DNA of 63,936 nucleotides, filler included, from Octopus bimaculoides (Eukaryota), in NCBI RefSeq assembly GCF_001194135.2. It is 9 parts of 8 records of this genome, joined end to end, with 100 filler letters (N's around TTAATTAATTAA, not from the genome) between each part and the next. Parts side by side here need not be neighbours in the genome. Positions count along the whole stretch, not along the records: positions 61,517 to 63,936 come from NC_068984.1; 8 more parts are not named here. One strand, written 5' to 3'. Of this stretch, positions 18,004-63,936 are shown piece by piece. The number at the start of each line of letters is the position of its first letter. Positions within the stretch are counted from its first letter, which is position 1. The translations under genes and the position numbers were made by a program. Under the pieces are notes generated by a model that made no database searches, was not told the origin of the DNA, and saw only the letters and a list, made by a program, of their open reading frames with translations.

Positions 18004-18004
<1 letters not shown>

Positions 18005-18027
18005 TGGCATGCACTGCTCTCTCACTC
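18004..18027 (+). mobile_element. 24-nt 3'-terminal remnant of the (TAA)n-associated non-coding element
   Basis: atggcatgcactgctctctcactc between two (AAT)n runs; nearly identical to the reverse complement of 61943-61966. Confidence 0.8.
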
Positions 18028-22782: not shown

Positions 22783-22998
22783 GGGATGGGCTACTCGAAC
22801 TGAAAAAAATTCTAACTGGGCCCCCAACTGCGAGGTCATGCACTGTTTATCTTGATATGAGATCACCATATCGCGCACATATGGTTGTGATGCATGTGCC
22901 TGGTGTACCCTTATCAGACGGGTAGTCATGATGGGTATATTGGGCTTCGTATATTTTACCCCGGTGTCACTTTGATGGCATGCTTTCTAAGAAGAGAG
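22783..22998 (+). mobile_element. (TAA)n-associated non-coding element, 3' part (remainder in gap)
   Basis: Reverse complement of about 63213-63430; followed by (AAT)n to about 23070. Confidence 0.85.
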
Positions 22999-61516: not shown

Positions 61517-61569
<53 letters not shown>

Positions 61570-61587
61570 TAATATTATTATTATTAT

Positions 61588-61932
61588 CATATTTACTTCT
61601 AATCTGCATGTTTGTTACAGTCACTTGCCGAGACACACCCGGCGTCCTAGGGCGAGTGAAGGATAAGCGATGTTACAGGATGAATGATAGCTCGAGGAGG
61701 GGAAGTGGCAGGGACAGTAGCGAAATATCTTCATGTAATACAACACAGACATTTAAATTGATAGGGTTTTTCTAAGGATGTGGGCAGTATTTGTTAGCAC
61801 AATCTTTTGAATTTGTCTGAGACATGGTTCTCCTGGGATGTTGTTTAGATGTTTCTGACATCCCTTTTTCTTTTATCATACCTAGAACACCTAAAATAAC
61901 AGGAACAGTTCTTACTTTAAGATGCCACATTT
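61588..61932 (-). mobile_element. R4/Dong-like 3' end (third family) in (TAA)n
   Basis: EMWHLKVRTVPVILGVLGMIK...IQKIVLTSTAHILRKTLSI* (after a frameshift) plus UTR; TAA repeats on both sides. Confidence 0.75.
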
Positions 61933-61942
61933 CATTATTATT

Positions 61943-62437
61943 CAGTGAGAGAGCAGCGCATGCCATCAAAGTGATACGAGGGTACAAATATACGAAGCCC
62001 AATATACCCATCATGACTACTCGTCTGATAAGTGTATACCAGGCACATGCATCACGACCATATGTGCGTAACATGGTGATCCCATATCAAGATAAACAGC
62101 ACCTTTCAGGCTGAGTAGCCCATATCACACAAAAGGTCCCCGAATAAGATTTGTTTTCAGGATGATGAACACCCACGTCTCCAGAGGTGAATTATTCAGA
62201 CCTCAAAGAACGCCTCTCAACACATGGCTATCATTCTCCCCACTACTTCTGAGATGCACATTTCGTCAGCCACTAAGAGACATGCTCGACTGGTTAAGAT
62301 CAAACAACTAACAAACAAATCTGTGGCATTGAGCACAATATTTGCTGCAGCCCATCTTTTATACTAAGACAAAAGAATGTACATGATAGCACTTCCAATC
62401 GGTTAAGATCAAAAGTCATGAGAACCACTGCCTGGTA
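61943..62437 (-). mobile_element. (TAA)n-associated non-coding element, near full length
   Basis: Colinear with 63213-63766; TAA repeats on both sides; no ORF or Pol III boxes recognised. Confidence 0.85.
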
Positions 62438-62442
62438 ATTAC

Positions 62443-62521
<79 letters not shown>

Positions 62522-62524
<3 letters not shown>

Positions 62525-62883
62525 TAGTTTTATTTTTATAAGGTGCTTTCACTTCACTACCGAGCGCAGCTCTGTGTGCCTTGGGTATGTACTGTGGTTT
62601 GCTGTGATGCTCTTATGGTTACTGTATTGAAAGTGTTTTGCGTAGGATGTGTGCAGTGCCCAGTAGTGCAATTTTCTGTATGTTATATATATTTGTAAGT
62701 CCTGGTGTTTTTGTTATGTATTTGTCTAAATATTTTTTTATTATACCTAAGGCACCTACTATGATAGGAATTGTTTCTGTTTTAAGATTCCACATTCGAG
62801 TTACCTCTATTTCCAGGTCTTTGTATTTTAGGTCATCCATATATAAAAGGTGGCTGACTGTTTTGCCGTAACATTTGTATCCC
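62522..62883 (-). mobile_element. R4/Dong-like deletion derivative: RT YMDD fragment fused to the 3' end
   Basis: GYKCYGKTVSHLLYMDDLK|YKDLEIEVTRMWNLKTETIPIIVGALG...ILRKTLSIQ*; same family as 20756-21063. Confidence 0.85.
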
Positions 62884-63194
62884 TTTTATAGCAGTTCTAC
62901 TGTGCACTCTATTCCAATTTCCTTTATATTCCCCTTGATGCTTTATGCTACTGTTCCCAAGTACCCAACAATAGCTGGTACTATCTTCACCTTCTTCAGT
63001 TTTCATAGCCGGGCTATTTCGTACTAATGATGGTTGTATTTATCCATATTTTCGCCTTCAATCTTAACTATTCGTGGGTCAAAAAGCATGCAACATCAAT
63101 TATATAGCATATGTGGTACACCTTGTCCACCACCACCAGGTCCGATCTATTATGCTCTAGCACCTGATCTGTTTGGATTGGGAAATCCCAGAGG
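62884..63194 (-). mobile_element. R4/Dong-like endonuclease fragment (fourth family)
   Basis: ILWDFPIQTDQVLEHNRSDLVVVDK...CYIIDVAC..FDPRI...KIVPAIVGYLG; its 5' end abuts (TAA)n. Confidence 0.8.
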
Positions 63195-63212
63195 ATTATT
63201 ATTATTATTATT

Positions 63213-63765
63213 GAGTAAGAGAGCAGCATGCCATCAAAGTGACACTGGGGTGCAATTATACGAAGCCCAATATACCTATCATGACTACCCGTCTGATATG
63301 GGTACACCAGGCACATACATCACAACCATATGTGCGCGACATGGTGATCTTATATAGAGATAAACAGCGCATGATCTTGCAGGTGGAGACCCAGTTAGAA
63401 TTTTCTTCAGGTTGAGTGGCCCATCCCGTTCAAAAGGTCCCTGAATAAGGTTTGTTTCAGGATGATGAACGGAACACCCGTGTTTCCAAAGGTGAATTAT
63501 TCAAACTCCAAGGAATTCTTCTCAACACTTGGCTATGATGCTCCTCCACTACCTCTTCTCGTGATCAGAGATGCGCATATCGTCAGCCACTAAGGGACAT
63601 GCTCAACTGGTTAAGGCCAAACAACTGACAAGAAAATTTGTGGTATTGAGTAGAATATTTGCTGTAGTCCATCTTTTATACCAAGACAAAACAATGTACA
63701 TGGTAACACTTCCAATAAGTTAAGATGAGAAGCCATGAGAGCCACGGCCTGGTATTGCATCAGGG

Positions 63766-63766
<1 letters not shown>
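63213..63766 (-). mobile_element. (TAA)n-associated non-coding element, full length (about 550 bp)
   Basis: Minus strand gccctgatgcaataccaggc...ctttgatggcatgctgctctcttactc, with (AAT)n on both sides. Confidence 0.88.
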
Positions 63767-63824
<58 letters not shown>

Positions 63825-63936
63825 GTAGTAGTAAAGGCAACGACATGCAGCAGACGACTGAAACTCTTTTATTCACTCTGCTGCCAGAAGTATTGGCGTG
63901 TCGGCTAAAATGCCTTGCAGTATTTATTCCTGTTCT

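What the first reader, a model, noticed from the sequence alone, without database searches (positions are those of the whole stretch)
63213..63766. A ~550-bp non-coding, non-tRNA retroelement that inserts only into (TAA)n: candidate non-autonomous parasite of R4/Dong
Seen: four occurrences (63213-63766, 61943-62437, 22783-22998, 18004-18027). Every end not lost in a gap abuts (AAT)n, with the same strand polarity as the Dong-like 3' ends. The two long copies start within about 12 nt of each other. I found no ORF, TIR or Pol III A/B box. Known: Dong elements (R4 clade, restriction-like endonuclease) target TAA repeats, and R2 has short internally deleted non-autonomous partners. Inference: this is a defined-length non-autonomous element mobilised in trans by a TAA-specific R4/Dong enzyme, or the long 3' UTR of another Dong family. 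Its 3' end does not match any Dong 3' end in this window.
Basis: partly seen in the sequence, partly recalled or inferred. Interest (0 to 1): 0.8.

Follow-up and report, generated by a model that had tools for sequence, protein, structure and literature searches.

The report
Octopus short retroposon inserting into TAA repeats
Two old copies of a roughly 550-base non-coding mobile element sit head-to-tail with fragments of Dong-like jumping genes inside one long TAA repeat of an octopus genome; the element most likely borrows those genes' enzyme to copy itself, which is a tidy but not surprising addition to known parasite-of-a-parasite elements.

Summary
In 61517-63936 two copies (63213-63766, 554 nt; 61943-62437, 495 nt) are about 85% identical at aligned bases. 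Both are flanked by (ATT)n on the + strand, i.e. (AAT)n on the minus strand. They have no conserved ORF, tRNA, Rfam match, B box or terminal inverted repeat.

The element reads on the minus strand. Its low-coordinate end is fixed to the base (...CTCTCACTN|AAT). A copy from a Tara metagenome scaffold keeps only the last 165 nt. A full-length copy of about 510 nt from another sequencing run begins within about 12 nt of copy B. All four copies have (AAT)n on both sides, in one repeat phase, and four unrelated sequences lie beyond the upstream repeat. So this is a unit of defined length, not the 3' UTR of a longer LINE.

The interleaved fragments are C-termini of RT/zinc-knuckle LINEs with the restriction-like endonuclease (RLE). 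Their full-length relatives match R2 protein structures and end in (AAT)n, which makes them Dong/R4-like.

Best reading (about 0.6): a non-autonomous retroposon without a small-RNA head, specific for (TAA)n and mobilised in trans by a Dong/R4-type enzyme. Not shown: the partner LINE, any 5' ribozyme, and transcription. I found no HDV-like core, and the 3' end matches no Dong 3' end available. It is a new member of a known kind, of modest interest.

The parts
63767..63824 (-). (AAT)19 target microsatellite upstream (5') of copy B. It degenerates into ACT/AGT units at 63825-63833.
   Evidence: TRF; sequence.
63213..63766 (-). Copy B, full length, 554 nt. The 5' end is AAT|GCCCTGATGCAATACCAGG and the 3' end is ...GCTGCTCTCTTACTC|AAT.
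   Evidence: Alignments; junction table.
63213..63380 (-). Conserved 3' module of copy B (about 170 nt). It is the only part well conserved in the external copies and is the candidate cis element for reverse-transcriptase recognition. It contains a predicted 23-bp G.U-rich hairpin and a terminal 6-bp hairpin.
   Evidence: BLAST 80-85% identity to L001 and L002; RNAalifold; pair counts.
63195..63212 (-). (AAT)6 between the 3' end of copy B and the 5'-truncated Dong-like remnant X1.
   Evidence: TRF.
62522..63194 (-). X1, a degenerate composite Dong-like LINE remnant. It consists of an RLE plus C-terminal module carrying frameshifts and stops, then a 19-codon RT fragment (GYKCYGKTVSHLLYMDDL), then an open C-terminal module (ORF 62619-62840) with its 3' UTR ending ...AAAACTACTG|AAT.
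   Evidence: Translations; blastx to P0006, P0156 and P0066; relatives and their domains.
62438..62521 (-). (AAT)28, with one ACT variant, upstream of copy A and downstream of X1.
   Evidence: TRF.
61943..62437 (-). Copy A, 495 nt. It begins 12 nt inside copy B's 5' end (AAT|TACCAGGCAGTGG) and carries internal deletions of 33, 5 and 11 nt. Its 3' end is ...GCTGCTCTCTCACTG|AAT.
   Evidence: P0003 carries the 33-nt segment, so A's gap is a deletion.
61934..61942 (-). (AAT)3 between the 3' end of copy A and the 5'-truncated Dong-like remnant X2.
   Evidence: Sequence; junction table.
61588..61933 (-). X2, the 5'-truncated C-terminal module plus 3' UTR of a second, different Dong-like family (one frameshift).
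   Evidence: Translations; blastx; shares only 64 nt at 75% with X1.
61517..61587 (-). (AAT)n downstream of X2. It runs to the edge of the piece.
   Evidence: TRF.

Best explanation
The element is a non-coding, non-autonomous non-LTR retroposon family of octopods, about 555 nt long, read on the minus strand of this window. New copies are made by target-primed reverse transcription into (TAA)n/(AAT)n microsatellites, in one orientation and one repeat phase (...AAT|element|AAT...). Dong/R4-like LINEs bearing the restriction-like endonuclease show the same orientation and phase and pile up in the same array.

The enzyme is most likely supplied in trans by such a Dong/R4-type LINE. The conserved 3' module of about 170 nt, perhaps together with a (UAA)n tail that can anneal to the nicked target, is the probable cis signal for priming. 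Transcription is probably by read-through or RNA polymerase II rather than polymerase III.

Shown: the repeat family, its strand, its defined length, 5' truncation, the target and its phase, the absence of coding capacity, and the Dong-like nature of the neighbours. Inferred: trans-mobilisation by Dong/R4, the role of the 3' module, and the mode of transcription. Unknown: how the 5' end is formed and which LINE family is the partner.
For: 1. Two copies about 85% identical at aligned bases, each bounded by (AAT)n.
2. Independent copies found through spurious ORFs. L001 (Tara metagenome scaffold) holds a 165-nt copy that keeps the low-coordinate end and sits between the only two (ATT)>=4 tracts in 15 kb. 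L002 (Logan run ERR12921341) holds a copy of about 510 nt with (ATT)n on both sides, 80% identical in the last 130 nt, 71% in the first 150 nt, and barely alignable in the middle.
3. O. bimaculoides ORFs read further 3' junctions: P0001 reads (TTA)9 straight into the element end, and P0005 ends ...CSLSQ followed by a TAA stop.
4. Junction table: every 5' junction is ...AAT| and every 3' junction is |AAT..., for copies A, B, L001 and L002 and equally for the Dong-like X1, X2, L003 and L004.
5. The 5' ends of A, B and L002 fall within about 12 nt of each other. The sequence beyond the upstream repeat differs in all four cases.
6. The neighbours are Dong-like. The 73-aa C-terminal ORF has 2493 representative relatives. 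The long ones carry RVT_1 and zf-RVT and match R2 retrotransposon protein structures 9nl3, 9dou, 9nl2 and 8gh6 at E down to 5e-28. Their contigs end in (AAT)n.
7. Literature: Dong elements target TAA microsatellites, including one in a snail (PMC3812793), and Dong-R4 LINEs are abundant and possibly active in Octopus (PMC13282606, PMC9115989).
8. Not polymerase III: no tRNA, 5S, 7SL or snRNA head, no B box, and T4 runs inside the sense strand from position 24-76 onward.
9. Not coding: variable columns by codon position are 11, 8 and 15 of about 40 each.
10. The minus-strand RNA of the 3' module folds better than the plus strand (-30.9 against -23.6 kcal/mol), with five invariant G.U pairs in the long hairpin.
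Against: - No partner was identified. The element's 3' end and 5' end match none of the Dong-like sequences available: X1, X2, L003, L004 and L005.
- No HDV-like ribozyme, although B. mori Dong and Ascaris R4 have one at the exact 5' end (PMC3774820). Rfam finds none. My own descriptor recovers the CPEB3 control but finds no canonical P3-L3-P1'-P1.1 core tied to the 5' end on either strand. The 5' 150 nt are no more stable than shuffles, with z from +0.07 to +2.0.
- The structure of the 3' module is not supported by covariation above shuffled controls or by single-sequence z-scores of -1.6 to +1.0.
- The sample is small: four copies with both flanks, and two more 3' junctions read from ORFs.
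- The window copies are old (K2P 0.17) and say nothing about present activity.
Confidence: 0.6

Rival explanations
1. The copies are 5'-truncated 3' ends (a long 3' UTR) of an autonomous Dong-like LINE family, not an element in their own right.
For: - 5' truncation does occur in this family: L001 is 165 nt.
- Dong-like 3' UTRs differ widely between families (X1, X2, L003 and L004), so an unseen family could carry this sequence.
- No full-length octopus Dong sequence could be retrieved for comparison.
Against: - Three of four copies with a readable 5' end begin within about 12 nt of each other at 495-554 nt. With scattered truncation points in a LINE of 4 kb or more, my rough estimate of the probability is at most 1e-2 to 1e-3.
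- All four are preceded by (AAT)n and then by unrelated sequence.
- No frame of the 5' region resembles the Dong C-terminal module.
Confidence: 0.12
2. The element is non-autonomous but is mobilised by a different LINE, for example an APE-type RTE-like element whose RNA ends in (UAA)n. The (TAA)n 'specificity' then comes from annealing of the repeat tail to AT-rich nicked DNA rather than from a Dong/R4 restriction-like endonuclease.
For: - RTE LINEs are the most expanded and possibly active LINEs in octopus (PMC9115989, PMC8967140, PMC13282606).
- From my own knowledge, not checked here: RTE 3' ends are short AT-rich repeats.
- The element's 3' end matches no Dong 3' end available here.
Against: - All 5' junctions, as well as the 3' junctions, lie in (AAT)n and in the same phase as the ORF-bearing Dong-like elements.
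- The element is interleaved head-to-tail and in the same orientation with two different Dong-like families in one array.
- Tail annealing alone does not explain the in-phase 5' junctions.
Confidence: 0.15
3. A sub-variant of the best explanation: the element is a SIDE in the strict sense, made by internal deletion that joined the 5' UTR (with ribozyme) and the 3' UTR of one particular Dong family.
For: - Conservation has the expected shape: the 5' 150 nt and the 3' 170 nt are conserved and the middle is not.
- R2 shows that this route exists (PMC3414825).
- X1 in this same array shows internal deletion or template switching in Dong-like copies.
Against: - No HDV-like core at the 5' end.
- No similarity to any available Dong-like 5' or 3' UTR; the parent family is unknown.
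Confidence: 0.2
4. The two copies arose by segmental or tandem duplication of a block within the array, not by two insertions.
For: Both copies lie 1.3 kb apart, in the same orientation, and each is followed by a Dong-like fragment.
Against: - The fragments that follow them belong to different families and share only 64 nt at 75%.
- The spacer repeats differ in length.
- Independent copies exist on other contigs.
Confidence: 0.02
5. The plus-strand frame that gene callers pick (HAIKVTLGYKYTKPNIPIMTT...) is a real coding exon.
For: That frame was called as a gene in all four database hits. Two of them are O. bimaculoides annotation entries.
Against: - It matched no Pfam family in the database's precomputed annotation of the hits.
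- Codon-position variation is flat: 11, 8 and 15.
- The frame runs out of a (TTA)n tract read as poly-Leu (P0001).
- It is broken by indels between copies.
Confidence: 0.01

Closest known systems
R2 SIDEs (short internally deleted elements) of Drosophila, PMC3414825
   Same: Short, non-coding and without a polymerase III head. They insert at the same specific target and in the same orientation as a site-specific RLE-bearing LINE. They are propagated by TPRT and show 5' junction variation.
   Different: A SIDE is visibly the 5' ribozyme plus the 3' UTR of a known parent R2. Here the parent is unknown, neither end matches any available Dong-like element, and no HDV-like ribozyme core was found. 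The target is a microsatellite, not rDNA.
Dong (Bombyx mori), DongAg and DongBg, R4 clade; PMC3812793, PMC3774820
   Same: (TAA)n target in a fixed orientation. The Dong-like fragments in the same array have identical junction phase.
   Different: Dong elements are autonomous LINEs of about 4-5 kb with RT, a zinc knuckle and an RLE, and with a 5' HDV-like ribozyme. The element has no ORF and no detectable ribozyme.
SINEU with Tx1-Mar LINEs of crocodilians, PMC4494074
   Same: A non-autonomous element that shares the target preference of a target-specific LINE. That paper discusses dependence on flanking transcription.
   Different: SINEU has a U1/U2 snRNA-derived head, and its partner is an APE-type Tx1 element. 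Here there is no small-RNA head, and the presumed partner carries an RLE.
Classical tRNA-derived octopus SINEs (tRNA-Core, tRNA-Deu; PMC8967140)
   Same: Short, abundant-type non-autonomous retroposons of octopus genomes.
   Different: Those have tRNA heads with A and B boxes and are dispersed. This element has neither and sits in (TAA)n.

Membership tests
SINE in the strict sense (polymerase III-transcribed, small-RNA-derived head) | 5' head derived from tRNA, 5S, 7SL or snRNA | tested here: not met
   ARAGORN finds 0 genes. Rfam finds no such family at E<=10 in the piece or at E<=1 in L002.
SINE in the strict sense (polymerase III-transcribed, small-RNA-derived head) | Internal A and B box promoter | tested here: not met
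   No B box at up to 2 mismatches. A-box-like matches are no more frequent than chance: 14 observed against 9 +/- 3 expected.
SINE in the strict sense (polymerase III-transcribed, small-RNA-derived head) | No polymerase III terminator (T4 or longer) inside the unit | tested here: not met
   There are 3-4 T>=4 runs in the sense strand of A, B and L002, the first at position 24-76.
SINE in the strict sense (polymerase III-transcribed, small-RNA-derived head) | 3' tail shared with a partner LINE | tested here: inconclusive
   No match to X1, X2, L003, L004 or L005. No octopus Dong library was available.
SIDE (internally deleted derivative of a site-specific LINE) | Same target site and orientation as the parent LINE | tested here: met
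   (AAT)n on both sides, with the same phase and polarity as the Dong-like elements.
SIDE (internally deleted derivative of a site-specific LINE) | 5' end is the parent's self-cleaving (HDV-like) ribozyme | tested here: not met
   Rfam finds none. The descriptor scan, with the CPEB3 control recovered, finds no core tied to the 5' end. The 5' 150 nt are not unusually stable. A non-canonical ribozyme cannot be excluded without an assay.
SIDE (internally deleted derivative of a site-specific LINE) | 3' end identical to the parent's 3' UTR | not testable with these tools
   The parent family is unknown, and only five Dong-like 3' or 5' ends were available.
Autonomous Dong/R4-clade LINE (asked of the element itself) | ORF with RT, CCHC zinc knuckle and restriction-like endonuclease | tested here: not met
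   No conserved ORF. blastx against Dong-like proteins gives only chance-level hits, E 0.009-0.2 against a database of 4.7k letters.
Dong/R4-like RLE LINE (asked of the neighbours X1 and X2) | C-terminal module homologous to RT + zinc-knuckle + RLE proteins of the R2 superfamily | tested here: met
   Relatives found. RVT_1 and zf-RVT in P0066, P0017 and P0073. R2 structures 9nl3, 9dou, 9nl2 and 8gh6 match at E 5e-28 to 8e-16. blastx places X1 and X2 on those proteins.
Dong/R4-like RLE LINE (asked of the neighbours X1 and X2) | 3' end joined to (TAA)n in sense orientation | tested here: met
   X1, X2, L003 and L004.
Dong/R4-like RLE LINE (asked of the neighbours X1 and X2) | Phylogenetic placement inside the R4 clade together with B. 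mori Dong and Ascaris R4 | not tested
The assignment rests on the target and on published RepeatMasker-type annotation of Dong-R4 in Octopus (PMC13282606, PMC9115989).

The most novel reading that the evidence does not exclude
This is the first described non-autonomous parasite of the R4/Dong clade. It has no small-RNA head and apparently no ribozyme, it is confined to (TAA)n, and its 3' module of about 170 nt is conserved across octopod lineages while matching no Dong 3' UTR. If so, Dong-type enzymes would accept foreign RNAs through a (UAA)n tail plus a portable structured module, a relaxed mode of template choice that has not been shown for RLE-bearing LINEs. The element would then offer a minimal substrate for defining what a microsatellite-targeting reverse transcriptase recognises.
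Probability: 0.25. Interest if true: 0.55.

Novelty: new member of a known kind. Interest (0 to 1): 0.33.

Why it matters
- Octopus genomes are unusually rich in SINEs and unclassified short repeats; one recent annotation lists 893 'unclassified SINE' families (PMC13282606). Dong-R4 LINEs are among the few LINE groups thought to be still active there.
- A short element of defined length that shares Dong's microsatellite target would give part of that unclassified fraction a mechanism.
- It would explain why long (TAA)n tracts in octopus become nested arrays of retroelements.
- It would provide a compact RNA for testing what a (TAA)n-specific RLE-bearing reverse transcriptase needs in cis.
- On the practical side, at least three O. 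bimaculoides UniProt entries (A0A0L8FFV7, A0A0L8GW01, A0A0L8HA28) are spurious ORFs read from this repeat.
- None of this changes the general picture of LINE/SINE biology.

Tried and rejected
1. Exact and degenerate DNA scans of the metagenome, bacterial/archaeal genome and viral collections with conserved element motifs found nothing. Those collections hold essentially no cephalopod DNA.
2. A 1919-aa chimeric query made of all stop-free frames returned nothing. Local phmmer showed that the known hits would have scored 49-100 bits, so the word-index candidate step failed and that search was wasted.
I used its single job on the Dong-like 73-aa ORF instead.
4. A third protein search with the minus-strand frame of the 3' module found one O. 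bimaculoides entry without a contig.
5. Exact look-ups of P0001, P0003 and three window ORFs found no contigs, so the source contig and further flanks could not be obtained.
6. Pfam and PDB searches with the degenerate X1 and X2 translations gave nothing directly. Classification had to go through intact relatives.
7. The first, loose HDV descriptor gave dozens of spurious hits. The stricter core descriptor gave none at the 5' end. On the Dong-like 5' regions of L003-L005 the stricter descriptor gave nothing convincing and Rfam found no ribozyme, so there is no within-clade positive control.
8. There is a weak resemblance between one frame of the 3' module (DHHVAHIW.*CMCLVY..T.SHDR) and the CCHC zinc-knuckle region of Dong-like proteins. 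I rejected it as chance: E 0.1-0.2 against a database of 4.7k letters, and it makes no mechanistic sense for a 3' end.
9. The top relatives of the Dong-like ORF turned out to be mostly cnidarian, so they could not lead to the octopus partner.
10. One literature search returned only irrelevant papers.

Full report
**What is in the piece.** The 2420-nt piece (61517-63936) is one long trinucleotide array, (ATT)n on the + strand and (AAT)n on the minus strand, broken by four inserts.

Read on the minus strand, from high to low coordinates, the order is:
- (AAT)19, 63824-63767
- copy B of the element, 63766-63213, 554 nt
- (AAT)6
- a Dong-like remnant X1, 63194-62522
- (AAT)28
- copy A, 62437-61943, 495 nt
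- (AAT)3
- a second Dong-like remnant X2, 61933-61588
- (AAT)n running to the edge of the piece

**Check of the observation.**
- Copies A and B align end to end with 87% mean column identity. At aligned bases p = 0.148 and K2P = 0.17. There are three internal indels.
- Their low-coordinate ends coincide to the base (...CTCTCACTG|AAT and ...CTCTTACTC|AAT). Their high-coordinate ends differ by 12 nt.
- Inside the element no stop-free stretch is shared by both copies beyond about 57 codons.
- ARAGORN finds no tRNA. Rfam finds nothing at E<=10 apart from low-complexity hits on the repeat. There is no B box at up to two mismatches and no terminal inverted repeat.
- The two 'element plus Dong fragment' units are not a segmental duplication. 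X1 and X2 share only 64 nt at 75% and 32 nt at 81%.

**Independent copies.** The DNA collections on hand hold no cephalopod DNA, so I looked for copies through spurious ORFs. A profile of the plus-strand frame of the low-coordinate region found four proteins:
- Two are Octopus bimaculoides UniProt entries, which places the window in or near that genus.
- One lies on a Tara metagenome scaffold (L001).
- One lies on a Logan contig from run ERR12921341 (L002).

L001 carries a 165-nt copy that keeps exactly the low-coordinate end. It sits between the only two (ATT)>=4 tracts in 15 kb.

L002 carries a copy of about 510 nt with (ATT)n on both sides. It is 80% identical in the last 130 nt, 71% in the first 150 nt, and hardly alignable in between.

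Two O. bimaculoides ORFs give further 3' junctions. P0001 reads nine TTA codons straight into the element end. P0005 stops at a TAA directly after ...CSLSQ.

**Strand, mechanism, target.** One end is fixed and the other varies, and the shortened copy lacks the variable side. That is the signature of target-primed reverse transcription with 5' truncation, so the RNA sense is the minus strand.

In that sense every 5' junction reads ...AAT| and every 3' junction |AAT..., for A, B, L001 and L002. The ORF-bearing Dong-like elements (X1, X2, and the external L003 and L004) show the same polarity and phase.

**Defined length, or a 3' UTR?** A, B and L002 begin within about 12 nt of each other. Depending on how L002 is aligned, either all three share the start TACC and B has 12 extra bases, or B and L002 share the start and A is 12 nt short.

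The sequence beyond the upstream repeat is different in each of the four cases: unique sequence for B, the 3' end of X1 for A, and unrelated flanks in L001 and L002. No frame of the 5' region resembles a Dong C-terminus.

With scattered truncation points in a multi-kilobase LINE this coincidence would be unlikely; my own rough estimate is 1e-2 to 1e-3. I therefore regard the element as a discrete unit. P0003 contains the 33-nt segment missing from A, so about 554 nt is closer to full length.

**What the neighbours are.** Pfam and PDB see nothing in the degenerate translations themselves. The intact 73-codon ORF at 62619-62840 has 2493 representative relatives. The long relatives carry RVT_1 and the RT zinc-binding domain. 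Their closest solved structures are R2 retrotransposon proteins, with E down to 5e-28 and alignments that run through the endonuclease region. Their contigs end in (AAT)n.

Together with published work this makes X1 and X2 Dong/R4-like:
- Dong elements target TAA microsatellites, including one in a snail (PMC3812793).
- Dong-R4 LINEs are abundant and possibly active in Octopus (PMC13282606, PMC9115989, PMC8967140).

I did not test formal placement in the R4 clade.

**How it most likely works.** The shared target, phase and orientation, and the co-residence with two different Dong-like families, make trans-mobilisation by a Dong/R4-type enzyme the best explanation. It remains an inference.

The 3' module of about 170 nt is the only well-conserved part and is the obvious candidate for the cis signal. 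As minus-strand RNA it folds into a long G.U-rich hairpin plus a small terminal hairpin that shows one compensatory change. The consensus energy is -30.9 kcal/mol, against -23.6 for the plus strand. However, covariation does not exceed shuffled controls and single-sequence z-scores are unremarkable. The structure is therefore unproven.

Polymerase III transcription is unlikely. There is no small-RNA head and no B box, and T4 runs lie early in the sense strand. Read-through or polymerase II transcription is inferred by exclusion.

**The ribozyme question.** B. mori Dong and Ascaris R4 carry HDV-like ribozymes that cut at the exact 5' end (PMC3774820). R2 SIDEs keep theirs (PMC3414825). I found none here:
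- Rfam is silent.
- A descriptor that recovers the CPEB3 ribozyme finds no canonical P3-L3-P1'-P1.1 core tied to the 5' end on either strand.
- The first 150 nt are no more stable than shuffles.

RNAalifold does pair the 5'-terminal TACCAGG with a segment about 70 nt downstream, with some compensatory changes. The neighbouring loop lacks the conserved C and G of HDV-like cores. There was no within-clade positive control, so only a cleavage assay can exclude a non-canonical ribozyme.

**Partner.** Neither end of the element resembles X1, X2 or the three external Dong-like loci. The closest relatives of the Dong-like ORF in the database are mostly cnidarian, so the octopus partner could not be reached with these tools.

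**Comparison and verdict.** Functionally the element resembles an R2 SIDE or a target-sharing SINE such as SINEU (PMC4494074).
- It fails the defining tests of a strict SINE: head, promoter and internal terminators.
- It meets only the target criterion of a SIDE.

I found no paper describing a Dong-dependent non-autonomous element. Those searches cover open-access text only, not Repbase or Dfam.

I file it as a new member of a known kind: a target-specific, LINE-dependent non-autonomous retroposon. Confidence is about 0.6 in the full statement and higher (about 0.85) in the narrower claim that it is a (TAA)n-inserting retroposon of defined length. Interest is modest, 0.33.

Noticed in passing
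window 62522-63194 (minus strand): X1 is a composite with no repeat at its internal joints. An RLE plus C-terminal module with frameshifts and stops ends at ...IECTVELL*K. It runs straight into a 19-codon RT fragment (GYKCYGKTVSHLLYMDDL), which runs straight into a second, open C-terminal module (KYKDLEIEVTRMW...ILRKTLSIQ*). The intact relative P0006 has DDNVSLKEMEKLS before KYKDLEIEV. This looks like template switching or internal deletion during reverse transcription. P0008 from the database shows a similar doubled C-terminal module.
   Followed up: partly
P0001, P0003, P0005 (UniProt A0A0L8FFV7, A0A0L8GW01, A0A0L8HA28, Octopus bimaculoides): These annotated 'uncharacterized proteins' are spurious ORFs read from copies of this repeat. 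P0001 includes a poly-Leu stretch that is the (TTA)n microsatellite.
   Followed up: partly
window 62619-62840 (minus strand) and its relatives: The C-terminal module downstream of the endonuclease (KYxDLEIEixRmW...IPvvvGALG...iQKiaLLGTAhILRK) is very widespread: 2493 representative clusters, many of them cnidarian. Pfam reported no match to it, either in X1/X2 or over that region of the full-length relatives.
   Followed up: partly
window 63213-63350 and 61943-62080 (minus strand): One frame of the element's 3' module (DHHVAHIW.*CMCLVY.YQT.SHDR) lines up without gaps with the H-x4-C part of the CCHC zinc knuckle of Dong-like proteins ([25 protein letters not shown]), about 28% identity, E 0.1-0.2 against a tiny database. 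I judged it to be chance.
   Followed up: partly
window 63825-63936: The array ends in three AGT units (ACT on the minus strand), followed by 103 nt of sequence with no similarity to anything else in the piece. This is probably the genomic flank of the original microsatellite, or another repeat cut by the edge of the piece.
   Followed up: no
L004 1-550 and L005 1-645: Two metagenome contigs carry near-identical full-length Dong-like LINEs (1084-aa ORF) with GC-rich 5' UTRs of 550-645 nt. Rfam finds no ribozyme in them and neither contig reaches an upstream (TAA)n, so the true 5' end is probably missing.
   Followed up: partly
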